In this document: one piece after another, positions 10,464-64,000 of the stretch
Layout of the letters: each line of letters starts with the position of its first letter
Position numbering within the stretch: the first letter of the stretch is position 1
NCBI GenBank assembly: GCA_025558095.1
Contig: JAIVFI010000042.1
Location: 393,036-457,035 of the forward strand
Length of the DNA stretch: 64,000 nt
Reading direction: 5' to 3'
From: Hyaloraphidium curvatum SAG 235-1
Lineage: Eukaryota > Fungi > Monoblepharomycota
Position numbers and translations under genes: made by a program
Notes under the pieces: model-generated
Seen by the model: the letters and a program-made list of their open reading frames with translations, nothing else
What the model was told of the DNA's origin: nothing
The model's database searches: none

Positions 10464-11537
10464 TTAGGCCCTCGGCATCGAGTCCTTGTTCGGGCCAAGT
10501 TGGACCGCAGCCTCTAGGAACTCCTCGAGATCGGGCTCCCGGACACCGCCGACGCCGATCACGAGTTGCCACATCGCGACCTCGGCGATGAGCGCCCGCA
10601 TGCCTGCGACGCCCAAATCTTCCAGCGACGGCATGCCGAAGCTCCCGACAGAGATGCGGAGGCCGCGGTCGGCTCGGTTGACGATCTCCCTGGGGTCGCC
10701 CGGGCCGGAGAGCACCATCCGTTCGACGACCAGCTCCTGGAGCCCCTGCGGCACGCCGGAACGGAACAAGGCCGAAGAACTGAGCTCGCCGATCTCGAGG
10801 AACTTGACCGAATCCAGTGCGGCGATGGTGCTGTACGTTGATTCGTCCAAGGCACCGTCGCACGTGATGCGCTCCGGTCGGAAGTATTCCGGGCACATGG
10901 CGAGCATGATCAATATCCCGGTGCCTCTCCAGGCCTTGATCTGGGGCATGATCTCTCGGTTTAATAGCACCCAGAAGATTCCGAATTGGGAATCATCGTC
11001 GTCCAGCCTCAGGCTGAGATGGTCAAGGACCCCAGCTCCTGCGACGAGGTGCGTGAGGACGTAGTTAAAGGGGTGAATGTCCTGTGCCCAGTAATTCAGC
11101 CTCTTCAGATTCGGGAGTTCAAAGGCAGGCGGGCCCGTGGGGTCTTCCAAAACGGTCCCTGAGCTGTCGATGACTTCGAGCTCCCTGACACTCCTCGGCA
11201 CGCTCCTCAGCACCTGGCACATTGTCTCGTAGTTTCCGAACTCGAGCTTCGCCGAAACGAGGTTCGTTCAAAGAGTCCGACTCCACAAGAGGTCGAGCAG
11301 CTCGTCGACGCCTCCCTCCTGCCACGCACCGCAGCCCGACTCGACCCTCTGGACGTGTCGGAGCCATCCGCGTGCGCGCCAGCGCTCGACTCTCTCGTCA
11401 AGCAGCTCCAGAGGACGCGGGTCGTGCGCAAAGACCGAGAACGCGAGCGGTTCGACGAGCAGCCCCCGGCGGGGAAGGAAGAGCGCGATGTGGGAGATGA
11501 TTTCGGGAGGGAAGACGAGGGGAGTGTCGGTTTCCAT
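10464..11537 (-). pseudogene. F-box-like/LRR-like protein, copy 1 (in-frame TGA at 11270-11268)
   Basis: F-box-like FPPEIISHIALFL. Downstream in-frame ORF 11222-10464 has LRR-like LPNLKRLN, LDSVKFLEIGEL, PQGLQELVV. Has a 36-bp deletion relative to copy 2. Confidence 0.6.
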
Positions 11538-11783
11538 GGTGTTTTCTGGATCCGTTGTGAAGGAGAGTTGTCGAGTCATCGGTCGGGGAAGCCAGCGCTC
11601 GCGCAAGCGCAAGGCTCGTGGAAAAGAACCTCAACGTCAAAGAGTCTCCATCAACCGGGCCCTTTTTATTCAGGTGCAACTCGGCCAACGACCATCACGG
11701 CACTCGGCCTGCCTTTGTATTAAGATTGCCCGGCATCACCCGCACGTCGGGTACAGCGTCACCTGCACCCCGCCGCCCCTCAG
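11243..11783. repeat. Left arm of a near-identical inverted repeat (partner 18953-19529)
   Basis: Reverse complement of 18953-19529 except one substitution I could see and a 36-bp deletion. Confidence 0.92.
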
Positions 11784-13241
11784 AATGCTCCACAGCCCGA
11801 TCGCCAGCGTCAGCGCGGTCGCCGCGACGTTCCTCGCCGTGGCGGCATCCACGCGGAACCCCATGAATCTGGCGTAATAGCCGTCCGAAGCGTCGAAAAA
11901 GGCCGAGATGAGGCGGTCGTGGTGCGCTGCGAGGCGCTGCGCAGCTTCGGAACCCGGGCCAGACACGTCGAGCTCGTACCGAGCGCGGCGGAGGGACGTG
12001 CGTGCCAACCTGAACAGGGATGAGATGACCGACACGTGCGCGTTACTGGCAGTGAACAAAGCCAGGTCCGCCCCAACGATGAACGCGATCGCGGCGAGGG
12101 TGGCGAGCGAGGCGCCGGGCAGGCAGTTGCCCAGCGCGATCCCCGCCACGGCAACCGCGACGGCATACAGCGGGAGGGGGATGAGGACGGAGGGACCCGA
12201 GGTAACGCGGTGGATGCGCGTGCGCCATGTGGGGCCGAGGGCATCCTGCAGGAGGAGGTACGGTTCCTGGGGCGGGGGCGATGGGCCATGCCCAGATGCG
12301 AAGGTGCGGTATCGCGCGAGGAGCCCGCGGAGGGCAAGGGTAGAAGCGCGGCGGTGTAGCCGCAGGGCAAACTGGATGGCGGCCACGTTGGCGCGGGCGC
12401 TGGCGAGTTGGTTGACATTGTGGTACTCCAGCGCCAGGGCTGCGACTAGCACGCAGAGCGATGCGGCCCAAGGGGAGTTCCAAGTGATGGAGGCGTAGGC
12501 GACGGCGGGCATTGAGAGGTAGATGGTGAAGTAAAAGGTGAACGATGCGCAAGCGTACCCAACGAACTCGAGCAGGCGAAACGCGGCCGCCCGGCCGGCC
12601 AGCTTGCCCGCACATTGGGTGCCGGGACACGGGCACAGCGGATCCGACGCGTCGTGTCGCAGCAGTAACGAGCCCGGCTCCGCGTCGCGCAGCTGCGCGT
12701 ATCGGGCGAACACGGCCAGAGGGTGTGCCGAGAGGTCCGACGGCGAGCCGAAGCGGCGCGAATAGGCGTTGCCAAAGAAGATGATCACGATGCCGGTCAG
12801 AAACGCGTGCAGCAGGGTGACGAAGGTGGAGACTGCCAGCTGCGGCGGAGAGAACCGGCCGAGTTCCCCTGCAAACGCCCACTGAATGGAGACAAGAGCT
12901 GAGCCTGTTCCGAAAAAAAGAGCTGCACGCAGATTGTGCCACGGCACGGCGTACTTTGCCAGAACCAGCTGCACGCGCACGAACTGGGTGAGGAGGGGAG
13001 ACGCCGCGAGCGCCGAGACAAGGTCATCGCGCGTGAGGGGAGACGATACCCTCAGCGAAGCAGCGGGGTCGGCCGATGGCTCTTCCTCGTCCACCTCGTC
13101 GGTTCCGGGAACGGTCGGCGCGGGAAAGAGGGCTATCCATTCGCGGGCGGTGAACGACGAGAGGGGTGCCCCTTTGTCTCCCGCGCCTTCCGCCTTCTCC
13201 AGGTCCACGGAAACCACCGCCTCGCGCGAAGAGTCTCCCAT
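11736..13241 (-). CDS. Orphan 7-transmembrane protein, gustatory-receptor/DUF3537-like candidate, intact copy (501 aa)
   Basis: Intronless ORF from MGDSSREAVV with seven hydrophobic segments, Cys loop DPLCPCPGTQC, and C-terminus YARFMGFRVDAATARNVAATALTLAIGLWSILR. Confidence 0.8.
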   Translation of the reverse strand: MGDSSREAVVSVDLEKAEGAGDKGAPLSSFTAREWIALFPAPTVPGTDEVDEEEPSADPAASLRVSSPLTRDDLVSALAASPLLTQFVRVQLVLAKYAVPWHNLRAALFFGTGSALVSIQWAFAGELGRFSPPQLAVSTFVTLLHAFLTGIVIIFFGNAYSRRFGSPSDLSAHPLAVFARYAQLRDAEPGSLLLRHDASDPLCPCPGTQCAGKLAGRAAAFRLLEFVGYACASFTFYFTIYLSMPAVAYASITWNSPWAASLCVLVAALALEYHNVNQLASARANVAAIQFALRLHRRASTLALRGLLARYRTFASGHGPSPPPQEPYLLLQDALGPTWRTRIHRVTSGPSVLIPLPLYAVAVAVAGIALGNCLPGASLATLAAIAFIVGADLALFTASNAHVSVISSLFRLARTSLRRARYELDVSGPGSEAAQRLAAHHDRLISAFFDASDGYYARFMGFRVDAATARNVAATALTLAIGLWSILRGGGVQVTLYPTCG

Positions 13242-13783
13242 CTTCCGCGCCGATTGAGAGAGCAGGCAACAGCGGACAACTTCAACGGGGAGTTCAGACG
13301 AGTTTTGGTCCCAAGGTCTCCGCGCTCGCAATCCCCATGCTTCCCCAGAACCAGCAGGAAATGACCCATCTGGCGTTAAAACGAAGGTTGGTACAATGTT
13401 CCTCTGCAGCCTTAATCGGCTTGGCCCTTTGCAGCTCTTGACCTGCTCTGTGTGTGGCAATAGTGGCAACGCGGTCCGTGAGTCAAAGCTTCAACCTACT
13501 CGAGAAGGCTGCACGCGGCTGAACCATGGGATCAGCATCTCCAGCATCAACTGCCCAATCTCCGCCTACAGATGCGTTCTTTGCCGGAAAGCCACGCTGA
13601 CGGCGGAGCGGGAAAGTATTGGGCGCCACGCCACCCGATCGCGATCGTGGGTCGCGGCGATTGCGCTAATAGCTGACTATCTCCGCAACGACCCTCCCGT
13701 TCCGGCCGGCCGGTTCCGCCTGAGTCTCCGAGCGAGCTTGCTCCAAAGCTTCCCGTGCACTGGCCGCTCGGCCGGCGCCCGCC

Positions 13784-15119
13784 ATGGCCAACGCTACCGT
13801 CCTCTCCGCCGCTGTCCCCGGCGCGCTCCCTCCGCACCTCCTCGCCGACACGTGGTGGGCTGCCCTCGGCCGGCGGTGGCTCTCGTACGCCGTGCCGATC
13901 CACGACGCGCTCGGAGGCTGCCTCACCTTCACGCTGTACTCGTTCGTGTTCCTCTGGGCAAAGTGGGTGTCCCGGTGGCAACTCGGCCGGGCGCTGCCTG
14001 ACACTCCGAAGCTGGATCCCAATATACGGCTTCTTCCGCGCCGTGGACAAGTACAACTTCCTCGGCCTGCAGCGGTACAAGCAGCACCCGGGGCGGTACG
14101 AGCCCCAGACGCTCAACGACAAGGTCGTCACGGGCGTGCGGTACGGCTTCTGGCGCGGCGCGATCCGCAACGCCGTGTTCTACTGGGTGTGGTTCTCTCA
14201 CGGGCGGATGGACATGCGGGTGTGGCCCAAGTCGCCTGTAAAGGTGGCCCTGGACGTGCTGTTCGGGTTCGTCCTGAACGACTTCCTGTTCTACTGGTTG
14301 GTGCCATCGTCGGAATGGGTATCTCCGGGCGGTCGGCTTACGGTCTTATGGCAGGGCGCACCGCGCGATGCACCACCCGCGGCTCTACAAGCACCTCCGT
14401 GAGCATTCCTAGCCGTTCGTTCCTGCCTTTTCCTGACTCCCGTTTGCCTCCCAGACAAGCAGCACCGTGCGTCCCAATTCGTCTCGCTTTTTGCGCACCT
14501 CCTGACCTCCTGCCAGACGAGTTCAAGGTGACCAATGTCGGCGCGACGGCGTGGAACGAGGCCTCGGAGTCCTTCCTCATCATGATCCTGGCCAACACCG
14601 TGGCGTGGTCGCTCTCGATGGACCTGTTCACGTGGTGCATGTGGATCATCCTGCAGAACTACTGTGGGTCGCCTGCCGTGCCCGGGTAGGGGTCGCTGAC
14701 GCGCCGGGAACGGCAGATGACCACTACGTGCACTCGGGCTACGCGTTCTGGTTCGACCCGGGGCAGCTCCTCGTCGACCCGCAGTTCCACGACTGTACGT
14801 CGACCTGGAGCCCCCTCTTGACTTGCCCGTGCTGACACCGATTCCAACAGGGCACCACTTTGCCAACGCGGGTAACTACTCCGTCACCTCCATCTGGGAC
14901 GTGGCCTTCGGGACAGACCTCAACTTCCGCGCATGGTGCATCCCGCCGTCCGGATTCCACGAACACGCCTGACCCGTCCCGCCGAGCAGGAAGATCCGGC
15001 AGGAGGAGCGCAGGCTGAAGGGCCTGCAGGAGGAACCCGAGCGGCGGGACGACGGGGACGACACCGGGGCGAGCTCGGGGTACGTCGGGTTCGATGAGGC
15101 CAAGGCCAAGTCGGGATAA
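13784..15119 (+). CDS. Sterol desaturase / fatty-acid hydroxylase superfamily (ERG25/ERG3-like), multi-exon
   Basis: Spliced His boxes: DFLFYW|AHRAMHHPRLYKHL|HKQH, HSGY, FHD|WHHFANAGNY, WDVAFGTD. Confidence 0.85.
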
Positions 15120-15277
15120 GCGGACGGTGGGGGACTCTGAAGGTGTGGACATGTGCGTAACTTGCTGCTTTGGCTTCGTTTGGCCTGTAGATTGTCTGTT
15201 GCGGACGATAGAGAGCGAAGGAATGGTGGCCCGTTTTTCGGGATCTATTGCTGTCCCAACCGCATCAGAGACGCAGA

Positions 15278-15976
15278 TCAAAAATCCACATCCTGCTCCA
15301 CAGGGTGCAGCAGTATTTCGTCCACCCGCACGTGCTTGGGCGCCGCCACTGCGTACGCGATGGCCTCGGCCACGTCCTCAGGCTTTAGCCAGCCCTTCTT
15401 GTGCTCCTCCCCCTGCTTCGAGTCCGCGAAGTTGGTGTCCACCATGCCGGGCCTGATCTCGCACACCCGCAGGCCATACTCGCGGCCTTCGTAGGCCAGG
15501 CACTGCAGCACCGCGCGCTGGGCGTGCTTCGAGGCGGTGTAGAGGGCGCCGCCGGAGAAGGTCCGCGCCGAAACGTCCGAGGTGACGCAGACGACGGTGC
15601 CAGACCCGCGGGAGCGGAAGTGCGGGAGCAGGGACTGCACGCACAGAAGCGTGCCGAGGACGTTGGTGTCCATGACCGTGCGATAGTCCTCGGCGGTGAT
15701 GCCGTCGACGGGGCCGAACTTGCCGACCCCGGCGTTCGCGACCAAAGCGGTGCAGCCCTGGGAAGCCGCGAGCTCGCCAAAGGCCGTGGTGGATGCGGGA
15801 TCGCGGACGTCCAGGGTGGCCACTGTGAGGTTCGGCGAGGCCAGCGCGGAGAGCGGGGAGGTGTCGCGGGCGCCGGCGACGACGCGGGCGCCGCGCGAGA
15901 GAAGGAGGGAGACAATGCCGTAGCCGATGCCTTTAGAGGCGCCGGTGATGGCGATCACGTGGCCAGAGAGGCTCAT
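15278..15976 (-). CDS. Classical short-chain dehydrogenase/reductase, intronless (232 aa)
   Basis: [16 protein letters not shown] catalytic motif, PGMVDT. Confidence 0.92.
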
Positions 15977-16134
15977 CCTATGGAGATGCGGGCGAAGGCG
16001 GCACAACTCCGTGGACGCGCGATCGGATCGGCACGACCCGAGCCCGACTGTTTACACTTGTTTGATCCCGCCGTCTACCCAATGCCGCCCGGTCTGTAGG
16101 ATCTTTCATCATTTGTCGCGCTGCGAGGGAAACC

Positions 16135-17241
16135 ATGGACGGCGAGGGCGAGAACCCGGCGCCGGACGCGGAGGAAAACTCCCTGGAGCTGCCCAACGAG
16201 CTCGTCTCGCACATCATGGGCTTGCTCCGAAATCGGGGCTGGAACGCGACGCTGCTGAGGCTCATGCTCGTGCAGAAACGCTTCTTTGTGATCGGCCTCC
16301 GCATCGTGCTGGACGACCTGCTGCTGGCGCCGGGCGACCCGGCCTGCGAGGCGAAATGGCGGCTGCTCGAGCGCGGCTTCGAGTACGCGGGGACGACGCC
16401 GCACCGCTTCGTGCGCGTGCTGCGCGTCAAGCTCGACGCCGACGTTGGCCCGGCCCGGCTGGACGCCCTCGGGAAGGCCCTGCGCGGCGCCGACGAGCTT
16501 GAGCTCTCGTGCGACGACCCCGTACGCGTGCGCACGGCGTGGAACGCCCTGGCATGGAGCGACAGGCTCACCCGGCTGTGCCTCCGCCTTACACCCCGGG
16601 CGTGGGGCGCCTTCCAGTCAACGAACCGCTTTCCCCGCTCCTTGTCGCGTGTGGACCTCGCCGAGGGATGTGACACAATGGAGGCCCTCGGCTTTCTCTC
16701 GATGATGGAGCGGGCCCCCAACCTCCGCGAGTGGGGGCTGGCGTGCTTTGACCACGTGCCGGCGTGGGCGTGGAAGAACCTCCCCTCGCTCGCGCGGAGG
16801 TTGAGGACAGCGGCAAGGGTGCGGGAGCACTCACTCGAGACTATCCTCGCCGAGCCGGCATTTACGATCGAGCGGATGTCGGTGTGCGCTCACGGGCCCT
16901 CCCTGGGGAAGCTGGACGCGTACATGCCCCTCCTGACCGGGGTGAGGGAGCTCTCCATTTGCACGGGGGAACCGGTGACCGTGCGGCCTCTCGCGTTGCT
17001 CCCTCCCAACCTGGAGGTGCTCAGCCTGTGGACCAACTCTAGCCCGCGGACGGTGGAGCACTACGCCGCGCTAGGCCCGCACGGGATGCAGATCCGGACA
17101 AGGAAGGAGGAGCTGCTCTCGATGTTCAGGCCGGGGACCGAGGCGAGGACGAGGGAGGGTTTGATGCGGAGCGAGCCCATCAGGGACGATTTCTGCGGGT
17201 GCACGGCGACGTTGTTCGTCAGGGATGCCGTAGGGCCGTGA
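16135..17241 (+). CDS. F-box-like protein with LRR-like C-terminal region (368 aa)
   Basis: LELPNELVSHIMGLL...LLRLMLVQKRFF; repeats RLTRLCL, PNLREW, LPPNLEVLSL. Confidence 0.65.
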   Translation: MDGEGENPAPDAEENSLELPNELVSHIMGLLRNRGWNATLLRLMLVQKRFFVIGLRIVLDDLLLAPGDPACEAKWRLLERGFEYAGTTPHRFVRVLRVKLDADVGPARLDALGKALRGADELELSCDDPVRVRTAWNALAWSDRLTRLCLRLTPRAWGAFQSTNRFPRSLSRVDLAEGCDTMEALGFLSMMERAPNLREWGLACFDHVPAWAWKNLPSLARRLRTAARVREHSLETILAEPAFTIERMSVCAHGPSLGKLDAYMPLLTGVRELSICTGEPVTVRPLALLPPNLEVLSLWTNSSPRTVEHYAALGPHGMQIRTRKEELLSMFRPGTEARTREGLMRSEPIRDDFCGCTATLFVRDAVGP

Positions 17242-17492
17242 TCCCGCCTTTCTGCTGAGTTCGTGCCTTCTCGTCCGTGAGACGGATGTAATCCGAGCCA
17301 GATATTCTGTCCTTATCCATGACGCAGGCCAATCGGACTAGGCTTTCCATCGTGCGTGGAACTCGCTGATGCCAGCCCCGAATCGGGCCCGAATCGTCCC
17401 CAGGCTGAGGACTGCCAGTGATCGAAGTCCGATAGCCGTCGACTCCGGCCCCTTCGACGCCCGCTCCGCCTTGTTTCTCGACTGCTTATCCG

Positions 17493-19000
17493 ATGAGCAC
17501 TGAGCCACGCGAATCGTCGGTGTGCTTGGACGCGGGCGACAAGGCCAATGGCGCGGGGGACAGAGACGCACCCCTCGCGACGTTCAGCGCGCGAGAATCG
17601 GTTGCGCTCTTCCCAGCGCCGCCCGGCCCCGGGACCGACGAACTGGAGGATACGACCCCGACCGACCCCGCGGCGGAGCTCAGGGCGTCGTGCCCGCTCT
17701 CCCGCGAGGACCTGCTTTCCGGGCTCGCCGCGTCTCCCATCCTCTCCCTGTTCGTGCGCGTGCAGCTGGTCCTGGCAAAGTATGCCGTGCCGTGGCACAA
17801 TCTGCGCGCAGCTCTATTTTTCGGAACAGGCCCAGCCCTTGTTTCCATTCAGTGGGCGTTTGCGGGGGAGCTCGGTCGGTTCTCTCGCCGCAGCTCGCCG
17901 TCTCTACTTTCGTCACCCTGCTGCACGTGTCCCTGACCGCCTTTGTGGTCATATTCTTTGGCCAAGTGTACACGCGCCGCTTTGGCTCGCCGACGGACTT
18001 GTCGGCACACCCGCTGGCCGTGTTTGCCCGTTACTACCAGCTTCGCTCAATGGAGCCCGGGTCGTTGCTTCTTTGCCACGATGCTTCCGATTCTCTGTGT
18101 CCATGTGCCAAACCCCTGTGTGCAGGAATGTTGCTCCGTCGAGCGGCCGCGCTGCGCGTGCTCGAGGCCGTTGTGCACGCCTGCGTTTCGCTCGCTTTCT
18201 ACTTCACAATTTACCTCTCAATGCCCTCCGTTGCCTACGCATCCATCACCTGGAACTCCCCCTGGGCGGCAGCGCTCTGCGCTGCTTATTCTGCCTTGGT
18301 GGTCGAGTACCACTGGGTCAACCATCTTGCCGGCGCGCGCGCCAACGTCGTCGCCATCCAGCTCGCCCTGCGGTTGCACCGCCGCGCCTCCATCCTCGCG
18401 CTCCGCGGCCTGATTGCGCGCTACCGCACCCTCGCCTCGGCCTATCCCACGTTTCCTTCGCCGGAGGAGCCGTACCTCCTCTTGCAGGGCGCCCTTGGCC
18501 CCACGTGGCGCACGCGAATCGAGCGCGTGACCTCGGGCCCCTCGGTCCTCATCCCCCTCCCCGTGTACGCCGTCGCGGTCGCGGTGGCCGGGATCGCCCT
18601 CGGGAATTGCCTGCCGGCTCCTTCGGTTTCGACGTGCGCAGTGATCGCATTCATCGTGACGGCAGACTTGGCGGTGTTCACGGCGAGCAACGCCCACGTG
18701 TCGGCCATCACGTCGCTCTTCAGATCGGCGCTCACGTCCCTCCGCCGCGCCCGCTACGAGCTCGACAAGGGCGGCGCCGCGGGGTCCGACGCGGCGCAGC
18801 GTTTCGGCGACCACCACGACCGCCTCATCTCGGCCTTTTTCGACGCCTCGGACGGCTACTACGCCAGGTTCATGGGGTTCCGCGTGGATGCTGCCACGGC
18901 ACGGAACGTTGCGGCGACTGCGCTCACCCTGGGGATCGGGCTGTGGAGCATACTGAGGGGCGGCGGGGTGCAGGTGACGCTGTACCCGACGTGCGGGTGA
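17493..19000 (+). pseudogene. 7-TM gustatory-receptor-like protein, copy 2 (1-nt frameshift near 17885)
   Basis: ORFs 17493-17936 and 17522-19000 together align end to end with copy 1. TTCTCTCGCCGCAG here vs TTCTCTCCGCCGCAG in copy 1; could be a sequencing indel. Confidence 0.8.
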
Positions 19001-19529
19001 TGCCGGGCAATCTTAATACAAAGGCAGGCCGAGTGCCGTAATGGTCGTTGGCCGAGTTGCACCTGAATAAAAAGGGCCCGGTTGATGGAGACTCTTTGAC
19101 GTTGAGGTTCTTTTCCACGAGCCTTGCGCTTGCGCGAGCGCTGGCTTCCCCGACCGATGACTCGACAACTCTCCTTCACAACGGATCCAGAAAACACCAT
19201 GGAAACCGACACTCCCCTCGTCTTCCCTCCCGAAATCATCTCCCACATCGCGCTCTTCCTTCCCCGCCGGGGGCTGCTCGTGCTGGCCGGCGCCTCGCGG
19301 TCCGCGCTCGCGCTCGTCGAACCGCTCGCGTTCTCGGTCTTTGCGCACGACCCGCGTCCTCTGGAGCTGCTTGACGAGAGAGTCGAGCGCTGGCGCGCAC
19401 GCGGATGGCTCCGACACGTCCAGAGGGTCGAGTCGGGCTGCGGTGCGTGGCAGGAGGGAGGCGTCGACGAGCTGCTCGACCTCTTGTGGAGTCGGACTCT
19501 TTGAACGAACCTCGTTTCGGCGAAGCTCG
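18953..19529. repeat. Right arm of the near-identical inverted repeat (partner 11243-11783)
   Basis: Direct sequence comparison; overlapping ORF translations are almost identical. Confidence 0.92.
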
Positions 19530-20462
19530 CATTCAGCAACTACGAATCAATGTGCGGCGTGCTGCGGAGCCTTATTATGCCGCGGAACATCAGCGAGCTT
19601 GAAGTCGTGGACCCCTCGGGGAGGCCTTTGCGTGCGGACCCCCTGGGGCCCTTCGAGATCCCGAATGTGAAGCACCTCAAGTACTCGGCCAAAGGCATCG
19701 ATCGTCTGAACTTTGCCATCACGCACCTCGTCAGCGGAAGCTTTAGACTGGAAAGTCTCGACCTGGGCGTGGACGTCGAGGATTCTGAACGAGTCCACTG
19801 GATGATAAACAACTACTCAATTCTGCGCACGATCACAGCTTGGAGCGGTACCGGCAAGGTGTTTGCTTCGGTTCCTGTGTGATTCAGCCGGCTTCCACCC
19901 CCAACGCATTGCGTGCGATGCCGTGGCGGACGGTCCCACGATGAGGGCCCTCGCCGAGCTGCCTTCGGTCAAGTCGCTCAAGATTGCCGAGCTCACTTCG
20001 TCGAGCATCATCCACTGGGGCTTGCCGCGGGGTCTTCGGGAGCTGGTCGTGGACCGCCTGGTTCTCTCCGCAATCGGACCCCCTGCGAAAGTCCTGCAGC
20101 AAGCACGGCGGTTCGACCTCCACGTTTCCGTCGGTTTGTTCTGCATGCCGCCTTTGGAACAAATCGAAGAGGGCTACAAAGGCGTCGCATCGCTCCAAGG
20201 CGAGATCGCGTTGTGGCGGGACGTGGTCGGCGTCGATGTGGTCATGGCACCCGATCTCGCGGAGTTTCTGGAGGCTGCGGACATGCTACGAAGGTTCCGA
20301 ACGCCGATGTGCTGGGTCGAAAGCGACGACCGAGCGGGACGTAGATCTGATGCCGTCCTGTCATCTGACGCCTATGGAGCCCGTAGAGGGGGAAAAGACA
20401 GACTTCCGCTGGAAAATGCTTCAGTAGATGACTGTCGGATGAATTCGCGTCTGCCGCGATGA
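19199..20462 (+). pseudogene. F-box-like/LRR-like protein, copy 2 (in-frame TGA 19502-19504; frameshift near 19860)
   Basis: METDTPLVFPPEIISHIALFL start. Segments 19550-19882 and 19863-20462 align with copy 1 (ELEVVDPSG, IACDAVAD, LPRGLRELVVDRLVLS, PDLAEFLEAA). Confidence 0.65.
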
Positions 20463-20573
20463 AGCCGATGCCCGTGGTGCGCAAGTTGGTGATTATGCAG
20501 CGGGCCATTCGGCGCAGCTGGCGGCCCGGCCCGTGGCGGGCCCCCGTCTTCTCCGGCCGGCTTCCCCCCGCCA

Positions 20574-22478
20574 ATGCCCTCGCCCAAGAAGCCGTGGGAG
20601 GTCAACCGGGAAAGCGGCGGCACGACATCGACCCTCGCAGTCCCGCCGGCGGCCGCACCGTCCTCCGCCGCCGCGCCCGGCCGGCCCGCGTCGCCGCTGC
20701 CGTCGTCGTCCGCCGCGGCGCCATCGGTCCCCGCGCGGCCCGCCAGCGGCTTCGGAACCGCTTCGACGGGAACGGTCGGCACGTACGGAGGAGCTAACAG
20801 GCCAGGTGGGTTGGGTGCGCCGGTGCCGCCGCCGGCCTCTGAACCGGTCCCTGCCCCCATCGCCCGCCGACCGGCTCCTGGCTCTTCTTGGACCATTTTG
20901 CTCGATTGCTTCCTTCTTTGTTGCTCGGACCGGGCCTTCTCTTGTGCCATCGGCCCCCCGCAGGCATGTTCGGCTCCTCGACCTATGGCTCCGGCTACGG
21001 CACGGGGGGCTACGGCACGGGCGGCTACGGCTCCACCTACGGCTCCAACTATGGCTCGAGCTACGGCGGCGGCTACAACTCCCCTTACTCCTCCAGCTAC
21101 GGCTCGGGCTACAACTCGGGCTACGGCGGCTACAACTCCCCTTACTCGTCGGGCTACTCCTCCTACTCGTCGCCCTACTCGCGCTTCGGCTCCTACAACT
21201 CCCCCTACTCGTCCTACTCGTCCTTCAACCGCCCTTACGGGAGCATGTACGGCTCCAACTACTACTCGAACGGGATGAACGACCCGAACGCGCTGAGCCG
21301 CAACATGGAGCAGTCGACCGCGGCGGCCTTCGGCGTGCTGGAGAACATCGTGTTTGCGTTCCAAGGCCTGTCGGGGATGCTCGAGAGCACGTTTCATGCC
21401 ACGCACAGCAGTTTCATGGCCATGGTGGGTTGGCGTCGGGGGTTCGCCGGGGTTTCTCTGACTTTGGCCCGGCCTATCCCTTCCCTACCCTCCCCAACCA
21501 CGCCCAACCTCCTCCCACACCACCTCCCACCCTTTTAACGTGGTCACGTGACCAAATAAGATGTCCTTGATCGACCAGTTCGGTAACCTGCGGAACATGC
21601 TCGGCGGCTTCCTCGGCCTCTTTGGCCTCGTCCGCTTCCTCCGCGACAGCGTCTACTGGCTCCTGGGCCGGGACCCGCCCGTGCGCGAGCTGACCCCCGA
21701 CGAGTTCGCGGAATGGGAGCGCTCCGGCGAGACGGTGCTCCCCGACGGCACCGTCGCCCCCGGCCAGAAGCCGCTCGTCGCGCGGGCCAACCGCAAGCCG
21801 TTCCTCCTGTTTTTCCTGTTCGCCATCGGCATCCCGTGGATCTTTTCCAGGCTGGTGAGGTTCCTCCAGGAGCAGCAGCTCAAGCGGGAGCGCCGCGCAC
21901 TCGAGGCCGCGGCGGCGAGGGGCGACCCGAACGCCAAGGCGATCCTCGAGGGGCGCGATCCCGCGGAGCTCGGGCTCGGGCCCGACGGGCAGCCGCTGCC
22001 GGGCTTGGCGGGGCCTCCCGGCGCGCCGGGGAAGCTGGTGTTTGCAAAGGCCAAGCACGCGTTCGAGCCGCAGTCGCCGCAGGAGCTGGCCCTGGAGAGG
22101 GGGGAGATCGTGGCGGTGCTCAACAAGGTGCGTCGATCTGCGTCGTTTGGGGCCCGTTGTAATGGTGTTGATTGTTTTGGTTGGGTACAGACCGACCCCG
22201 CGACGGGCCAGACGTCGGAATGGTGGCGCGGCCGCACCCGCGACGGCCGCATGGGCTTCTTCCCCGGCTCCTACGTCGAGGAGCTCCCCGACCCGTCGTC
22301 CAAGCCCGCGCCGCGGCCCGCGAGCTCCGGGAGCGAGCGCACGGCGGCGCCGGCGGGTAGCCCCGGCGGGCCGGCGGGCAGCCCGGGGGGTGCGCCGGAT
22401 ATGTCGGTGCGGCCGCCGAGCAGGGCGGCGAGCGCGGCGGGGAGTGCGTCGGGGAGGATAGAGGGGGGGGAGTTTTGA
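20574..22478 (+). CDS. PEX13: Peroxin 13 (peroxisomal docking protein with SH3), 4 exons
   Basis: N-terminal PKKPWE, Tyr/Gly/Ser-rich tract, Peroxin-13_N-like MEQSTAAAFGVLENIVFAFQGLSGMLESTFHATHSSF, TM helix, SH3 AKAKHAFEP...ELAL...EWWRG...GFFPGSYV. Confidence 0.93.
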
Positions 22479-22923
22479 GGGAGGGTGATGGGGATTGGGC
22501 GGGACGTGGGCTCGTTTCGGACGGACCCAGTCTGGACGTCGGCCCTGCGATCGGGAGTTGATCTTGCGCTTCTCTGGCCAAGTTGTAGATTCTGCGGCGA
22601 TGAAATAGGAAAAGCAACCGTGATCGTGTTCGTTTGGAGCATCGACCGTCTAATGCTGTCCAATACTGAACAAAAGGGCCTTCCGCATCGGTCCGATTAG
22701 GTTGTTGTAGTAGGGCAAGTAGATCAGTTTGCCTCTGAAAAGGATGTTTCAAGCACCGGCTACCAAAGCTTCCATAAGGCGGTGAAGATATTCGCTGCGT
22801 GTCGGGCTTCCAGCTTTGAACAGCTCGTGAATCATCTTTTGCTCTTTTCACGCACTACGAAAGGTGCTCCAAATCGATCCTGTTGGCCGCGTTCCCCTTG
22901 ACGCCGTGATGACCAGCTCACTT

Positions 22924-23908
22924 TCATCGGAACCAGCGGACGTGATCACGCCGGCCCGCCGTGCCGGCATCATCCTCCTTCTTCGCAGCTTCCTTTGGAC
23001 CAGCCAGCTCCCGATCGGCAGCACCGCGTTCCTCCTGCTGCAGCTGCTGATCGCCGATGCCGGGCTGCTCCGACTCCTCGTCGACCAGATCGAACTCGGG
23101 GTGGTTGGCGAACCATTCGTCGTCGATGTCCTCCGGCAAGAGTCCCCGGAGCCGCTGATCCTGGCCAATGGATGAGCCCGGCCGGCGCGTCCGCAAAGTC
23201 AACGTTCACCCACGGCTTCCTCGGCCTCCTCCAGGGGCTCCACGGGCTCCACATCTTCTTCCTCGGACTCGTCCGCGGAGCCCCCCGCCGTCCCGTGCGC
23301 GGGCGCCTCCGCCCCGAGGGACTCCCACGCCAGGTAGCACCGCCCGACCGCGTAGGCGCGCTGCCCCGCGTCGAAATCCAGGAAGCCGGGCACTTGCGCG
23401 AAGTGCTCCAGCAACGGCGGTAGCTTCGAAAAGGCCGCTTCGATGGCCTGTGGTGGCAGCAGCAGGGTCAGCGAAGCGCGCGTGACCGCGTCCCGAAGGG
23501 GCACCCACATGGGGGGGGAGACACCCAATGTGGAACGAACGGTACTCCTTGTACTTGGTTGCCGGCTCCTTCGGGGTGACCTCGCACACGACAGCCGCTA
23601 CTGGCTCGTTGAGCTGGCGGGAAGAGGCGACGTCCACGTCACCAGGAGCGGGAACAGGCGACTCCGCGTCACGAGGGGCAAGCACGTCAACCGCACTCTA
23701 CCTACCCTCATCCTCTTGTCCCGGCAATCTCTCTTTCGGCACTTGTCCGCAGTGCTCGCCAGCTGGGCCACAGAGACGCGTAAGAAGCGGGCATCGATCG
23801 TTGCGACCGCCCGTGGCCCACGCGGAAGACAACCGGAGGCGCCGTATTGAAGTCGATAGCGGTCCCGAGCCTCTCCTCTTGAAAGGGCTCTACATCTTCT
23901 GCCGACAT
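22924..23908 (-). CDS. PARP-type zinc-finger-like protein with acidic tail (5 exons predicted)
   Basis: Splicing gives VVFR|LASTADKCRKRDCRDKRMR|LNEPVAAVV...RSFHIGCLPPH|AIE...VPGFLDFDAGQR, i.e. C-x4-C...H-x2-C plus the GF-x-x-hydrophobic element of zf-PARP. Confidence 0.55.
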
Positions 23909-24312
23909 CGTTCCAGGCCGCGGGGGAGGGCTTTGTTTGTTGGCGTCCGGTCGCATCGAGTCCGAGTCACCGACCGATGCGCGCCGGCGTTACCCGCGCC
24001 GAAAAGTCGCCGGACACATGAACACACTCTGGAAGACACTACTGTTGGGTGGAATGGAAGGAGTGCAACATCTCTTCGTCTGCAGCAGATGTGGGATTGA
24101 TTCGAGAAGGTCGCTTCGGACAGTTCGGGAATCATCTTTTGGCTCGTCTGACGGCTGAATCATAAGTGGTCGCAAAGTCGCTCCATCGGCGCAGTGTTCC
24201 GTACCGCCGGCCAGTCAGTCTCCGAAACTCCTGCGCTCCTCGTTCCTCCCATTGCCGATCCGCGATGCTCGGCATCCTGCCCGACCCTGTTCGCCCCGCG
24301 GCCTTCCATCCA

Positions 24313-25415
24313 TCACCAGCACGTCGGGTAGAGCGTCACCTGCACCCCACCGCCCCTCAGTATGCTCCACAGCCCGATCCCCGGCGTGAGCGCGGTCGCC
24401 GCGACGTTCCTCGCCGATCCGGAAGCCCATGAACTTGGCAAAGCAGCCGTCCGAGGCGTCAAAAAGGCCAAGATGAGGCGGTCGTGGTGCGCCGCGATGT
24501 GCTGCGCCGCATCGGATCCGGCCGTGCCCTTGTCGAATTCGCAGCGCGCGCGGCGGAGCAACCCCCGCGCGGATCCGAGCAGCGAGGAGATGACCGACAC
24601 GTGGGTGTTGCTCGCCGCGAACACGACCAGGTCCGCGGCGACGAGAAAGGCGACCAAGGCCGCCGTGGCCAGCGAGACAGCGAGACGGCGGGGAGGCAGT
24701 TCCCAAGGGCGAGCCGCGCCGCGGCGACCACGACGGCGTTCAGCGGGAAGGCGATCGCGAGCGAGGGACCGGAGGTGACGCGCTGGATGCGGGTTCTGGG
24801 CCATGTCCGGCCGAGGGCGTCCTGCAAGAGGAGGTACAGCTCCTCCGGCGGAGGATATGAGGGATAGGCCGAAGCAAGGGTGCGGTAGCGCACGAAGAGG
24901 CCGCGGAGCGCGAGGGTGGAGGCGCGGCGGTGCAACCGCAGGGCGAGCTGGATGGCGACGACGTTGGCACGGGCGCCGGCGAGCACGTTTACAAGGGTGT
25001 ATTCCACGGCCAGGGCAGCGAAAGCAGTGCAGAGCGCTGCGGCCCAGGGGGAGTTCCAGGTGATGGATGCGTAGGCAACGGAGGGCATTGAGAGGTAGAT
25101 TGTGAAGTAGAAAGGAGCGAAACGCAGGCGTGCACAACGGCCTCCGCACGCGCAGCGCGGCCCCTCGACGGAGCAGCCTCCCTGCACACCGGGGCTCGGC
25201 ACATGGGCACAGAGAATCGGAGGCATCATGGAAAAGAAGCAACGACCCGGGCTCCATTGAACGAAGCTGGTAGTTACGGGCAAACACGGCCAGCGGGTGT
25301 GCCGACAGGTCCGCCGGCGAGCCGAAGCGGCGCGTGTACACTTGGCCAAAGAATATGACCACAAAGGCGGTCATGAACACGTGAAGCAGGGTGACGAAGG
25401 TGGAGACGGCGAGCG
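24313..25415 (-). pseudogene. 7-TM gustatory-receptor-like protein, copy 3 (5' truncated, several frameshifts)
   Basis: LAVSTFVTLLHVFMTAFVVIFFGQVYTRRFGSP...GIGLWSILRGGGVQVTLYPTC spread over three frames; closest to copy 2. Confidence 0.85.
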
Positions 25416-26739
25416 GCGGCCCGGGGACCCGCTCGCGGCGACGACCGGTGGTCGCGCGAGGCAGCCGGTCCGACCGAGGGCAACGGCCGTCCGGAGCCTT
25501 CCCATGAACGGGGGAGCTTTCCCTGCGCCAATCTGCCGCAAGATGCGGGCCCGATGGCCGGCTCCCGGAGGCGCTCCGGAGAAGGCGGCGGGGACGGAGG
25601 GATGGCGCCGCGTCCGGGGCCGACGACCGGGATTCAGTCGGTTCCCGCTTTCTTTGCGATGAGGAAGCTCCCGTTTCCGCGTCCGGATCCCTCGGGCGCG
25701 GTCCGCGGAGCCCGCGGGGGGATCGGCGGCCAATCGCAAGACTGTCCGGCGCAACGGTCGACGGGCGCGCCCCGGGATCGACATGGAGGCCCGAGATGTT
25801 GCTATGGATCGAAGATGCGGTCGAGTGCGGCGTCTTCCCTGGTGTCGTGGGGGGCCGCGAGGTGGGGGAGGCAAAGCAGCTGTCACCCCGCGTTCGACCG
25901 CCGCCGTGGGAGCGGAACAGTACATCGCGCCCGCGGAGCCGCCGGATCGGCATCAAAGACGGGCGAGGGCGGACCGGGTGCGGCACGGCGTCATTGGCGG
26001 TCGCGCGGAGGATCGGGCGCGGCGGTGGCGGGCGCTTGCCGTACGGAGACCGTTCTCACGTGCCATCCGCGGCCGGGTGCGCTCCCGGAGGAGGATTCCG
26101 TCCGATCGGAGGCCAATCACACGTATCCATCCCACCGCAGCCTGTTCGCTCCGCCGCTTGTGCCGCTGCGGGCGCATCCTAGGTGGGCCCGCGACGATCT
26201 TCGGGGCCAGGCTATTCGGGGCTTGGGCCGGGCCAGCTTTGCCGACAAAGGGCCCAGCAAGCGCACCACCACCCCGCACGCACCAGGTGAGCAGCGCACC
26301 GCCGCAACGGGCGGGCGCAGCGCGGGCGCGACAGGAGGCTGCCGGCGGCGGCGCGCGGCGCGGGGCCGGGGGCGCCGAGCGCGGGCCGGGAGACAGTCAG
26401 CCGGGGGCCATCCCCCGCGCGGGCAACCCCGCCGCGCCAACCCGCGCGCAGCGCCATCGCGTCTATTGCCGCCAGAAAGGGGCATCGGCCGGCGGCGCGG
26501 ATGGCGGCGGGGCGCGGGCACCGGCGGGCGGCCGCGGGCGGGTGCCGGGAACCCGGTGCCGCCGGCGGATGCGCGCACCAACCCGCCCTGCCCGCGCTTC
26601 CAACGGCCGCGGGACGCCTCTCCGTCCTTTTGCCGACCGCGCGCGCACGGTGCTGACGCTCCCGCCCCGCTCCCGCCCCCCCGCGCCCGTTTGTTTCTTT
26701 TCCAGCTCTCCCTCCCCGCAACACCACCCGGCATCCGAA

Positions 26740-63544: not shown

Positions 63545-63842
63545 AACGCCAGATCGGATTCCGGGGCACCTCCGACGCTGGCGATGCCAATACAAGTCTT
63601 CAGTTTTCCCGTGCCCCTTGCTTGGCGGCGTCTTCCGGGCGGCCGCCATTTCCTCTGCTCCGGTCCGACCCGATTCCTTCCTTCATCATTCCCGTGCGCA
63701 TCGTGCTTCCGGACGGCCGGCTTCGGATCGTGGACGCACTCGTGGACTCCGGCGCCGACGCCTGCTTCATGGACGTGACTTTCGCGCGCTGCGTTGGGTA
63801 CTCTTGCTTGCCGCGCTCCACGCCTTTCGGGCTCGACGTTAC
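63511..63842 (+). pseudogene. pol: Truncated pol (retroviral-type aspartic protease)
   Basis: ALVDSGADACFMD active-site motif; frame runs straight into TTAGG repeats. Confidence 0.88.
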
Positions 63843-64000
63843 TTAGGTTAGGTTAGGTTAGGTTAGGTTAGGTTAGGTTAGGTTAGGTTAGGTTAGGTTA
63901 GGTTAGGTTAGGTTAGGTTAGGTTAGGTTAGGTTAGGTTAGGTTAGGTTAGGTTAGGTTAGGTTAGGTTAGGTTAGGTTAGGTTAGGTTAGGTTAGGTTA
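63843..64000 (+). repeat. Telomeric repeat (TTAGG)n, about 31 perfect copies
   Basis: Perfect pentamer array to the end of the window, with the G-rich strand running 5'->3' toward the end. Confidence 0.97.

What the first reader, a model, noticed from the sequence alone, without database searches (positions are those of the whole stretch)
11736..25415. Expanding family of orphan 7-TM proteins resembling insect gustatory-receptor / DUF3537 ion channels in a fungus
Seen: three paralogues (11736-13241 intact, 17493-19000 one frameshift, 24313-25415 decayed). The intact copy has about 7 hydrophobic helices, a CPC-x4-C loop after TM2, a long charged helical loop between TM4 and TM5, a short TM5-TM6 link (GNCLP), and the tail LISAFFD..GYYARFMGFRVD..TARNVAATALTLAIGLWSIL. 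Established: insect GR/OR channels, GRLs of unicellular eukaryotes and plant DUF3537 proteins share this layout, including a hydrophobic-G-F-x-hydrophobic-D hairpin before a split TM7. Inference: a lineage-specific family of ligand-gated chemosensory channels undergoing birth-and-death evolution near a chromosome end, i.e. a possible non-GPCR fungal chemoreceptor system.
Basis: partly seen in the sequence, partly recalled or inferred. Interest (0 to 1): 0.85.

Follow-up and report, generated by a model that had tools for sequence, protein, structure and literature searches.

The report
Insect-receptor-like channel genes in a fungus
Three neighbouring gene copies near a chromosome end of the aquatic fungus Hyaloraphidium curvatum (one intact and transcribed, two broken) belong to a family of several hundred seven-helix membrane proteins whose predicted shape matches insect smell and taste receptor channels better than any other solved structure, although no sequence search links them.

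Summary
Copy 1 (11736-13241, minus strand) is intact, 501 aa, intronless and transcribed. Copy 2 (17493-19000) has a single 1-nt deletion. Copy 3 (24313-25420) lacks its 5' end and has two frameshifts.

- The family has seven hydrophobic segments, N-terminus in and C-terminus out, with long inner and tiny outer loops.
- Two confident AlphaFold2 models (pLDDT 88, pTM 0.89) were built, of copy 1 and of a paralogue 26% identical to it.
- No GPCR appears in either top 50.

Sequence-level membership fails: there is no Pfam 7tm_7, 7tm_6 or DUF3537 signal, and the GR TM7 motif is at most 1-2 of 4 positions.

The family is very large. It gives 301 protein clusters in a 1.8-billion-protein library, and 27 of 30 sampled are H. 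curvatum. It is dispersed genome-wide, and a few environmental relatives exist, so it is not a strict orphan.

Channel and chemosensory function remain inference. One test, variability of the outer versus inner halves of the helices, went against the simplest ligand-pocket model.

Earlier notes of this scan already describe the same family on other pieces of this genome. New here are the position 39-52 kb from a (TTAGG)n telomere, transcription of copy 1, and the pseudogene states of copies 2 and 3.

The parts
11736..13241 (-). Copy 1: intact, intronless gene for a 501-aa seven-TM protein (stop codon at 11736-11738)
   Evidence: One open frame. Identical to a protein on the 457,035-bp contig (P0001). 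Family profile E 1e-143. AF2 model pLDDT 88, pTM 0.89.
11890..13386 (-). Transcribed span of copy 1 seen in an RNA-derived contig: the coding sequence from 11890 up to the ATG at 13241, plus about 145 nt of 5' UTR (13242-13386), with no splice joint
   Evidence: record 2, 1,511 nt, depth 30, no differences and no joints. The run is RNA, because the neighbouring gene in it carries six GT..AG joints.
12612..12656 (-). Codons for H196-x3-D200-x2-C203-P-C205-x4-C210 in the TM2-TM3 (cytoplasmic) loop; inferred Cys3-His metal site
   Evidence: H196, C203, C205 and C210 are kept in 98-99% of 109 full-length members, D200 in 93%. The loop lies on the K/R-rich side. It is modelled as coil with pLDDT 93-96. 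Metal binding is inference.
11775..11873 (-). Codons for the GF turn (457-465) and TM7b (466-489), the most conserved stretch and the putative pore helix
   Evidence: Mean top-residue frequency 0.56, against 0.29-0.36 for TM1-6. DSSP shows helix 432-455, a turn, then helix 466-489, i.e. a split TM7.
12123..12125 (-). Codon for C373 in the four-residue TM5-TM6 outer link; inferred disulfide partner of C500 (codon 11742-11744)
   Evidence: C373 is kept in 97% and C500 in 96% of members. Both lie on the K/R-poor side. Strands 373-375 and 493-495 appear in both models. The disulfide is inference.
17493..19000 (+). Copy 2: full-length paralogue of copy 1 with one 1-nt deletion between 17882 and 17888; a recent pseudogene or an assembly error
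   Evidence: Sister of copy 1 in the tree with support 1.0. dN/dS to copy 1 is 0.21 at dS 0.63.
24313..25420 (-). Copy 3: pseudogene, truncated at the 5' end (profile positions 1-114 missing) with two frameshifts (near 25147-25199 and near 24675)
   Evidence: The public model KAI9002620.1 (P0005, 235 aa) bridges the second frameshift with a GT..AG 'intron' at 24611-24678 that removes TM6-coding sequence.
11034..11735 (-). Downstream flank of copy 1, duplicated in inverted orientation beside copy 2 (19001-19742). The duplicated module is the 7-TM gene plus the start of an orphan neighbour gene.
   Evidence: blastn: 11034-13199 matches 19742-17538 at 82% identity. The flanking ORFs are paralogous and have no Pfam family.
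63843..64000 (+). Telomere repeat (TTAGG) x 31.6 at the window and contig end (context)
   Evidence: The same repeat ends contig C1 and lies at high coordinates of C2-C5. The window is the last 64 kb of contig C42.

Best explanation
SHOWN. The region holds a subtelomeric cluster of three members of a very large Hyaloraphidium curvatum gene family. One is functional and transcribed, one is freshly broken, and one is decayed. The family encodes proteins of about 500 aa with seven TM segments, N-in/C-out topology, and the fold of insect odorant/gustatory receptor channels (the 7TMIC superfamily). The fold features are long cytoplasmic extensions of TM4, TM5 and TM6, a TM7 split into TM7a and TM7b, and tiny extracellular loops. 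The family is too divergent for any sequence or profile method used here to link it to 7tm_7, 7tm_6 or DUF3537.

INFERRED. As in Orco, OR and GR structures, subunits probably assemble into tetramers through the cytoplasmic 'anchor' (TM4-6 extensions plus TM7a). The conserved TM7b would then line a central cation pore that opens when a small molecule binds inside the helix bundle. The several-hundred-gene repertoire, evolving by duplication, divergence under purifying selection and pseudogenisation, would let this non-swimming planktonic fungus sense many environmental chemicals.

Two lineage-specific additions are also inferred: a cytoplasmic Cys3-His metal (zinc?) knuckle in the TM2-TM3 loop, and a disulfide tying the C-terminal tail (C500) to the TM5-TM6 link (C373).

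My odds: 7TMIC fold about 0.85; homology rather than convergence about 0.65; ion channel about 0.5; chemoreceptor repertoire about 0.4.
For: Fold.
- The AF2 model of copy 1 has pLDDT 88 and pTM 0.89.
- Foldseek gives ORs and GRs probabilities of 0.6-0.99 (one OR5-Orco chain 0.44), and every other fold 0.14 or less.
- ESM Atlas shape search gives TM 0.51-0.56 (0.65-0.67 by target for rows 1 and 3, 0.42 for row 2) to unnamed clusters commonest in Cnidaria, Arthropoda and Echinodermata. A DUF3537 cluster is among the nearest named clusters by language-model features (weak).

Topology. Mean K+R is 8-9 in the N-terminus and in the loops TM2-3, TM4-5 and TM6-7. It is 0.7 or less in the loops TM1-2, TM3-4, TM5-6 and the C-tail. 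Loop lengths are 67-77 aa against 4-7 aa.

Helix lengths. 257-315, 327-371, 376-427, 432-455 and 466-489.

Family.
- At least 94 six-frame matches on many contigs, from 728 first-look candidates.
- 301 clusters at E <= 1e-3 and 210 at E <= 1e-10; 27 of 30 sampled are H. curvatum.
- TM7b is the most conserved stretch and TM1-6 the most variable.
- dN/dS is 0.21-0.49.

Transcription. An unspliced RNA contig lies over copy 1.
Against: - No sequence or profile link: Pfam finds nothing for 23 members at E <= 10. A family profile finds no OR or GR among PDB sequences. The 7tm_7 and DUF3537 HMMs find nothing in the genome, though that search also rang in no control genome.
- The GR TM7 motif is matched at 1 of 4 positions (T478-L...S485-I486), or 2 of 4 in another register (T475...L483).
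- Foldseek E-values are only 0.01-0.5, with global TM 0.27-0.40.
- The outer halves of TM1-5, where insect ORs bind ligand, are more conserved than the inner halves (entropy 2.68 against 3.20 bits, p 4e-7). This is the opposite of the simplest 'diversifying outer pocket' expectation.
- No oligomer model, ligand, current or localisation data exist.
- I could not inspect model coordinates, so helix packing, the metal site and the disulfide are untested.
Confidence: 0.6

Rival explanations
1. The proteins share the 7TMIC fold, by descent or by convergence, but are not chemoreceptor channels. They would serve another membrane role, such as an ER or organelle scaffold, transporter or lipid-handling protein (compare PHTF, an ER protein of unknown function). 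The expansion would then reflect something other than ligand diversity, for example intracellular partner diversity.
For: Variation is greater in the cytoplasmic halves of TM1-5 than in the outer halves. The cytoplasmic loops are long, and one of them carries a near-invariant His/Cys module. The TM2-TM3 loop is longer than in insect receptors, a trait described for Class-B PHTF-like 7TMICs (10.1101/2023.08.30.555482). Most non-insect 7TMICs have no demonstrated channel function (PMC9998090).
Against: A repertoire of several hundred with pseudogenes is the signature of environment-facing receptor families. The most conserved element is the helix that lines the pore in ORs and GRs. The nearest Atlas clusters are animal proteins of 395-419 aa and DUF3537, not PHTF-sized proteins.
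Confidence: 0.22
2. The proteins are ion channels of the 7TMIC type but are used for something other than sensing environmental chemicals, for example self/non-self or mating-type-like recognition, or responses to stress, temperature or light. [quoted passage not shown]
For: Members of the insect and nematode family have non-chemical modalities, as the two papers above indicate. Outer-half conservation could fit a shared stimulus.
Against: Hundreds of divergent paralogues are hard to reconcile with one physical stimulus. The extracellular loops are only 4-7 aa, too small for protein-protein recognition.
Confidence: 0.1
3. The OR/GR resemblance is an artefact: a generic long-helix bundle produced by AlphaFold2 from a paralogue-only alignment, matched by chance to another helical membrane protein.
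Against: Two targets only 26% identical, modelled with different alignments, give the same seven top hits out of 48,161. Coverage is over 80% of each receptor chain, whereas almost every other hit (apart from the receptor Gr64a at rank 10 for copy 1) covers under 200 residues. Topology, loop asymmetry and the split TM7 agree independently of any structure search. By my own recollection, the alphafold2_ptm weights were trained on the PDB before the first 7TMIC structure (6C70, 2018) was released.
Confidence: 0.05
4. The proteins are GPCR-like seven-TM receptors with an extracellular N-terminus.
For: Seven TM helices and a large family size, as in fungal and animal GPCR expansions.
Against: Positive-inside counts put the N-terminus and all long loops on the cytoplasmic side. 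No GPCR chain appears in the top 50 of either exhaustive structural scan. No GPCR Pfam family is hit.
Confidence: 0.02

Closest known systems
Insect odorant and gustatory receptors and Orco (7TMIC superfamily, Class A; e.g. PDB 8jm9 Gr43a, 7lic MhOR5, 8vc1 BmGr9, 8z9a Orco)
   Same: Seven TM segments, N-in/C-out, long intracellular and short extracellular loops, long cytoplasmic extensions of TM4-6, and a split TM7 whose C-terminal half is the most conserved helix. These are the best structural matches in the whole PDB for two divergent members. Both are large, fast-evolving, pseudogene-rich multigene families.
   Different: No detectable sequence or profile similarity (7-10% identity in the structural alignments). 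The (T/S)Yhhhhh(Q/K/E)(F/L/M) motif is absent. There is an extra N-terminal region of about 100 aa with a conserved FSxxEWLALFP motif. The TM2-TM3 loop is 65-75 aa and carries an H-x3-D-x2-CPC-x4-C module. A conserved Cys pair lies in the TM5-TM6 link and at the C-terminus. The genes are intronless. The organism is a fungus without neurons or motility.
Unicellular-eukaryote GRLs, in particular the single GRL of the chytrids Spizellomyces punctatus and S. palustris (Benton et al. 2020, PMC7746228)
   Same: A fungal (chytrid-grade) lineage, GRL-type secondary structure, and a TM7 motif conserved at only about 1 of 4 positions.
   Different: Those species have one gene each, found by sequence similarity to GRLs. 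Here there are hundreds of genes with no such similarity.
Plant DUF3537 proteins (PF12056)
   Same: Same superfamily layout. A DUF3537 cluster is one of only two named families among the nearest language-model neighbours (score 0.91).
   Different: The PF12056 HMM finds nothing in this genome or in 23 members. Plant families have 4-12 members.
PHTF-like Class-B 7TMICs (Himmel et al. 2023 preprint, 10.1101/2023.08.30.555482)
   Different: PHTFs are single-copy, conserved proteins described as having a long N-terminal region and a long TM2-TM3 loop. This family is compact (about 500 aa), greatly expanded and fast-evolving. Its nearest Atlas clusters are GRL-sized. Class assignment could not be tested.

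Membership tests
7TMIC superfamily (structural definition of Benton & Himmel 2023, PMC9998090) | Seven predicted transmembrane domains | tested here: met
   Family-mean hydropathy gives seven hydrophobic segments; TM5 and TM6 form a hairpin joined by four residues. The AF2 helices agree. DeepTMHMM was not available.
7TMIC superfamily (structural definition of Benton & Himmel 2023, PMC9998090) | Intracellular N-terminus (opposite to GPCRs) | tested here: met
   Positive-inside rule over 23 members: K+R is 8-9 in the N-terminus and in the loops TM2-3, TM4-5 and TM6-7, against 0.7 or less in the other loops and the C-tail. This is a prediction only, not an experiment.
7TMIC superfamily (structural definition of Benton & Himmel 2023, PMC9998090) | Intracellular loops longer than extracellular loops | tested here: met
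   Mean lengths are 75, 77 and 67 aa (inside) against 6, 7 and 4 aa (outside).
7TMIC superfamily (structural definition of Benton & Himmel 2023, PMC9998090) | Long TM4, TM5 and TM6 projecting below the bundle (anchor domain), and TM7 split into TM7a and TM7b | tested here: met
   DSSP helices 257-280 plus 286-315, 327-342 plus 350-371 (one helix, 319-372, in P0150), 376-427 (52 aa), 432-455, a turn, then 466-489. The three-dimensional packing could not be inspected visually.
Animal GR/GRL family (Pfam 7tm_7 PF08395; 7tm_6 PF02949) | TM7 motif (T/S)Yhhhhh(Q/K/E)(F/L/M) | tested here: not met
   The best registers are T478-L-AIGLW-S485-I486 (1 of 4) and T475-A-LTLAI-G482-L483 (2 of 4). The motif definition is from PMC7746228, which calls it diagnostic but not definitive.
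Animal GR/GRL family (Pfam 7tm_7 PF08395; 7tm_6 PF02949) | Significant sequence or profile similarity to the family HMM | tested here: not met
   hmmscan of 23 members against Pfam at E <= 10 gave no 7tm_6, 7tm_7 or trehalose-receptor hit. PF08395 against the six-frame genome gave none. The family profile against PDB sequences found no OR or GR. Profile-profile comparison (HHpred/hhalign) was not possible.
Plant DUF3537 (PF12056) | Match to the PF12056 HMM | tested here: not met
   Searches gave no match. The only hint is a weak language-model neighbour.
7TMIC ion channels (functional definition) | Homo- or hetero-tetramer with a TM7b-lined pore and ligand-gated cation conductance | not testable with these tools
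The only indirect support is that TM7b is the most conserved helix.
GPCRs (rival) | Extracellular N-terminus and a rhodopsin-like, Frizzled-like or cAMP-receptor-like 7TM fold | tested here: not met
   N-in by the positive-inside rule. No GPCR is in the top 50 of either exhaustive structural scan. No GPCR Pfam family is hit.

The most novel reading that the evidence does not exclude
Hyaloraphidium curvatum, a non-motile planktonic early-branching fungus, has independently built a repertoire of several hundred insect-type (7TMIC) ligand-gated chemoreceptor channels. That would be the largest such repertoire outside animals. It carries lineage-specific modules: a cytoplasmic Cys3-His metal knuckle and an extracellular C-terminal disulfide. 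This would show that large 7TMIC chemosensory repertoires are not an animal invention, and it would give a genetically simple, intronless system for studying them.
Probability: 0.35. Interest if true: 0.9.

Novelty: new variant of a known kind. Interest (0 to 1): 0.78.

Why it matters
In the literature I could read, fungal 7TMICs are a single gene in two Spizellomyces species (PMC7746228). A later structural screen covered only Chytridiomycota and Blastocladiomycota among fungi (10.1101/2023.08.30.555482). No paper listed by a search combining Hyaloraphidium with 7TMIC, gustatory-receptor, odorant-receptor or chemoreceptor terms mentions Hyaloraphidium.

A fungal family of several hundred members with this fold would be of a size I recall for insect OR/GR repertoires. 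It raises the question of what a non-swimming unicell senses with it.

It also offers intronless genes of about 1.5 kb for heterologous expression. That would allow a direct test of whether non-animal 7TMICs are ligand-gated channels, a question the field explicitly calls open (PMC9998090, concluding remarks).

The conserved His/Cys loop and the terminal Cys pair are testable structural novelties.

Tried and rejected
- Pfam scans of copy 1, copy 2 and 23 paralogues gave nothing relevant; the PAP2 hit at E 0.024 for copy 2 is below cut-off and was rejected.
- The family profile against PDB sequences gave only a chance hit at E 0.61.
- The 7tm_7 and DUF3537 HMMs against the six-frame genome gave no match, but the same search rang in no control genome either, so it is weak evidence.
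- The word-indexed homologue search, by single sequence and by profile, found only the query and one paralogue. This is a sensitivity limit, not absence.
- The metagenome scan failed first for lack of conserved columns. With a seven-sequence alignment it then gave 335 pattern matches but no confirmed relative. Environmental relatives were instead found through the representative library.
- The viral structure library gave only weak giant-virus hits.
- A GPCR reading was considered and rejected.
- The idea that the whole family is subtelomeric was considered and rejected. Nine of roughly 85 loci lie within 60 kb of a contig start, about what chance gives for 55 contigs (contig lengths not all known).
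- A real intron in copy 3 was considered and rejected. The annotated intron removes TM6-coding sequence and coincides with a frameshift.

Full report
WHERE THE WINDOW LIES
The window is the last 64 kb of contig C42 (393,036-457,035) of a 31.9-Mb, 55-contig assembly. The closest public proteins are all 'hypothetical protein DFJ74DRAFT_...' of Hyaloraphidium curvatum. By my own knowledge this is a non-flagellate planktonic fungus placed in the Monoblepharidomycetes. GC content is 62-77%. The window ends in 31.6 perfect TTAGG units. The same repeat ends contig C1 and lies at high coordinates of C2-C5. It is therefore a true telomere, and the three copies lie about 39-52 kb from it.

THE OBSERVATION
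tblastn with copy 1 and hmmsearch with a family profile find exactly three copies in the window.
- Copy 1 (13241->11739, minus strand) is a single open frame of 501 aa.
- Copy 2 (17493-18997, plus strand) is collinear over its whole length but switches frame once. A DNA alignment shows a single-base deletion (TCTCCGCCG to TCT-CGCCG) near 17883-17887.
- Copy 3 (25419->24319, minus strand) covers only profile positions 115-497, in three pieces and two frames. It has therefore lost the N-terminus and TM1 and carries two frameshifts.
- The public annotation (KAI9002620.1, 235 aa) models copy 3 with a GT..AG 'intron' at about 24611-24678. That intron deletes sequence homologous to TM6 and coincides with the second frameshift. 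I read it as an annotation work-around on a pseudogene.
- The duplication is larger than the gene. 11034-13199 matches 19742-17538, inverted, at 82% identity, so it includes the start of a downstream orphan gene.
- Copies 1 and 2 are sisters in a 110-tip tree (support 1.0). Their next relatives lie on other contigs.
- dN/dS between copy 1 and copy 2 is 0.21 (dS 0.63). Copy 2 was therefore under purifying selection for most of its history. Its single lesion is either recent or an assembly error in a CC dinucleotide.

TRANSCRIPTION
One public run holds the locus. Its contigs show six GT..AG joints of 49-118 nt in the neighbouring gene (13536-16005) and an Illumina adapter tail, so it derives from RNA. 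A 1,511-nt contig (depth 30, no mismatch, no joint) lies on 11890-13386. That spans roughly 145 nt of 5' UTR plus codons 1-450 of copy 1, unspliced. The contig stops where copies 1 and 2 become nearly identical, which is expected for an assembly graph. Copy 1 is thus an expressed, intronless gene.

THE PROTEIN
No Pfam family matches copy 1 or 22 paralogues even at E <= 10.
- Family-averaged hydropathy gives seven hydrophobic segments: about 104-126, 133-157, 222-248, 256-278, 351-372, 377-399 and 467-489.
- Charge is sharply asymmetric. Mean K+R is 8-9 in the N-terminus and in the loops TM2-3, TM4-5 and TM6-7. It is 0.7 or less in the loops TM1-2, TM3-4, TM5-6 and the C-tail.
- Loop lengths are 67-77 aa against 4-7 aa.
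- This gives N-in/C-out with long inner and minimal outer loops. That is the reverse of GPCRs and matches criteria (i)-(iii) used for 7TMICs (PMC9998090).

STRUCTURE
With a 23-paralogue alignment, AlphaFold2 gives a model with pLDDT 88.0 and pTM 0.89. The helices are:
- 257-280 plus 286-315 (TM4 and its cytoplasmic extension);
- 327-342 plus 350-371 (TM5);
- 376-427 (a 52-residue TM6);
- 432-455 (TM7a), then a short GF turn;
- 466-489 (TM7b).

Foldseek against the PDB ranks AgOR28, AaOR10, BmGr9, Gr43a and Gr64a first, with probabilities of 0.6-0.99 (one OR5-Orco chain 0.44). Every other fold has 0.14 or less. The E-values are only 0.01-0.5 and the global TM-scores 0.27-0.40.

I conclude that the 7TMIC fold assignment is sound (about 0.85). 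Homology as opposed to convergence cannot be settled, because there is no sequence signal.

WHAT DOES NOT FIT FAMILY MEMBERSHIP
- The family profile finds no OR or GR among PDB sequences.
- The 7tm_7 and DUF3537 HMMs find nothing in the six-frame genome. That search had no positive control.
- The only primary-sequence hallmark of GRLs, (T/S)Yhhhhh(Q/K/E)(F/L/M) in TM7, is matched at 1-2 of 4 positions. The Spizellomyces GRLs also match at only 1 of 4, and in plant DUF3537 proteins the motif is described as largely unrecognisable.
I found no support for the claim that it is an established 7TMIC feature.

THE FAMILY
- A six-frame search of the genome returns 94 matching stretches, at least 80 of them near full length. 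They lie on many contigs and nearly all are uninterrupted ORFs. There were 728 first-look candidates, of which only 86 were scored.
- An exhaustive phmmer scan of 1.84 billion representatives gives 301 clusters at E <= 1e-3, 210 at E <= 1e-10 and 55 at E <= 1e-30.
- Of 30 clusters sampled, 27 are H. curvatum.
- The other three are environmental: two related metagenome contigs (L031 and L032, GC 54%, profile E 1e-94 to 1e-112) and an 18.5-kb Logan contig (L033, GC 53%).
- L033 carries a full-length copy with every hallmark motif: FSxxELLALFP, HD..CPCP..SC, GSCVP, FLGFQV and a C-terminal Cys.
- The family is therefore lineage-restricted, but not confined to one strain.
- Across 109 full-length members the near-invariant residues are H196, C203, C205 and C210 (98-99%), D200, C373, C500, N400, G461, R470, T478, R294, R298 and R180.
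- TM7b plus the preceding turn is the most conserved stretch (0.56). TM1-6 are the most variable (0.29-0.36). By my own recollection, insect ORs and GRs show the same overall pattern.
- dN/dS among the closer paralogues is 0.3-0.5, with dS at or near saturation.
- The family is not preferentially subtelomeric, judging by the start coordinates.

MECHANISM (INFERENCE)
By analogy with Orco, OR and GR structures, subunits would tetramerise through the TM4-6 extensions plus TM7a. TM7b (R470...T478...GLWS...LR488) would line the pore. A ligand would bind within the bundle.

Two family-specific features can be read from the conservation together with the topology. First, three invariant cysteines plus a histidine (H-x6-C-x-C-x4-C, with D200) sit on the cytoplasmic, reducing side, in a coil with high pLDDT. 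This suggests a Cys3-His metal site. Second, exactly two further invariant cysteines (C373 in the four-residue TM5-TM6 link, and C500 next to the C-terminus) sit on the extracellular side, where both models also place short strands (373-375 and 493-495). This suggests a disulfide. Neither could be checked, because coordinates are not returned.

One test went against the simplest chemoreceptor expectation. The outer halves of TM1-5 are less variable than the inner halves (entropy 2.68 against 3.20 bits, Mann-Whitney p 4e-7). In insect ORs the tuning pocket lies in the outer half (my own recollection). This keeps open the rival view that diversity is directed at the cytoplasmic side, or that the ligand site lies elsewhere.

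EARLIER NOTES OF THIS SCAN
Notes on other pieces of the same genome describe the same family and reach the same fold reading, with size estimates of 240-450 genes. I reached my reading before seeing them, and I tested the fold, topology and family size myself. My own data support at least about 210-300 members. I did not verify 400-450.

LITERATURE

VERDICT
It is unproven for channel and chemosensory function. I rate it a new, sequence-cryptic and greatly expanded variant of the known 7TMIC kind.

Noticed in passing
window 63843-64000; also G000 C1:1607521-1607645 and high coordinates of C2-C5: The telomere repeat of this genome is the 5-nt unit TTAGG (31.6 copies here). From memory this is the type known from arthropods, rather than the TTAGGG usual in fungi. 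All 703 pattern matches are on the forward strand and none on the reverse.
   Followed up: partly
window 63400-63840: Directly beside the telomere, reading the DNA by eye gives a CCHC zinc knuckle (LCIYCGQPGHVKAFCP, about 63470-63520) and a retropepsin-like VDSGADACFMD (about 63744-63776). This looks like a retroelement fragment abutting the telomere.
   Followed up: no
window 10467-11612 (-) and 19124-20459 (+); also 16135-17238 (+): An orphan gene with no Pfam family lies downstream of copy 1. Its 5' part was co-duplicated, inverted, beside copy 2. The copy next to copy 1 sits in an RNA contig of depth 286, about ten times that of copy 1. A third gene, of similar N-terminal appearance, lies at 16135-17238.
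   Followed up: partly
window 13536-16005: An RNA contig shows six short GT..AG introns (49-118 nt) in a plus-strand gene. It runs on without a break into the convergent short-chain dehydrogenase gene (15281-16006, minus strand; adh_short E 3e-37), so the 3' ends overlap. The 7-TM genes, by contrast, have no introns.
   Followed up: partly
window 21561-22475 (+), with a Y/G/S-rich ORF at 20888-21538: A peroxin-13 homologue (Peroxin-13_N E 4e-14 plus an SH3 domain) lies between copies 2 and 3. This is an ordinary housekeeping gene inside the subtelomeric cluster.
   Followed up: partly
copy 1 model against BFVD and language-model cluster 2: Weak fold hits (probability 0.4-0.8, TM about 0.3) to uncharacterised proteins of about 440 aa from giant viruses (Edafosvirus, Catovirus, Mimivirus LCMiAC02). 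One of the nearest language-model clusters lists Nucleocytoviricota as its commonest taxon. These may be 7TMIC-like proteins in giant viruses.
   Followed up: no
family alignment, TM1-TM5 (copy 1 residues 104-372): The extracellular halves of TM1-5 are significantly more conserved than the cytoplasmic halves (2.68 against 3.20 bits, p 4e-7); TM6 shows the reverse. This is unexplained, and it is not what a diversifying outer ligand pocket predicts.
   Followed up: partly
L033:1160-2870 (Logan SRR26194948 contig, GC 53%); L031, L032: Environmental contigs from at least one other organism, of lower GC, carry family members. One sits beside SNF2-like genes, the other beside MIOX and amine-oxidase genes. 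The L033 copy is split into two ORFs that overlap by 5 nt, which indicates a frameshift or a very short intron.
   Followed up: partly
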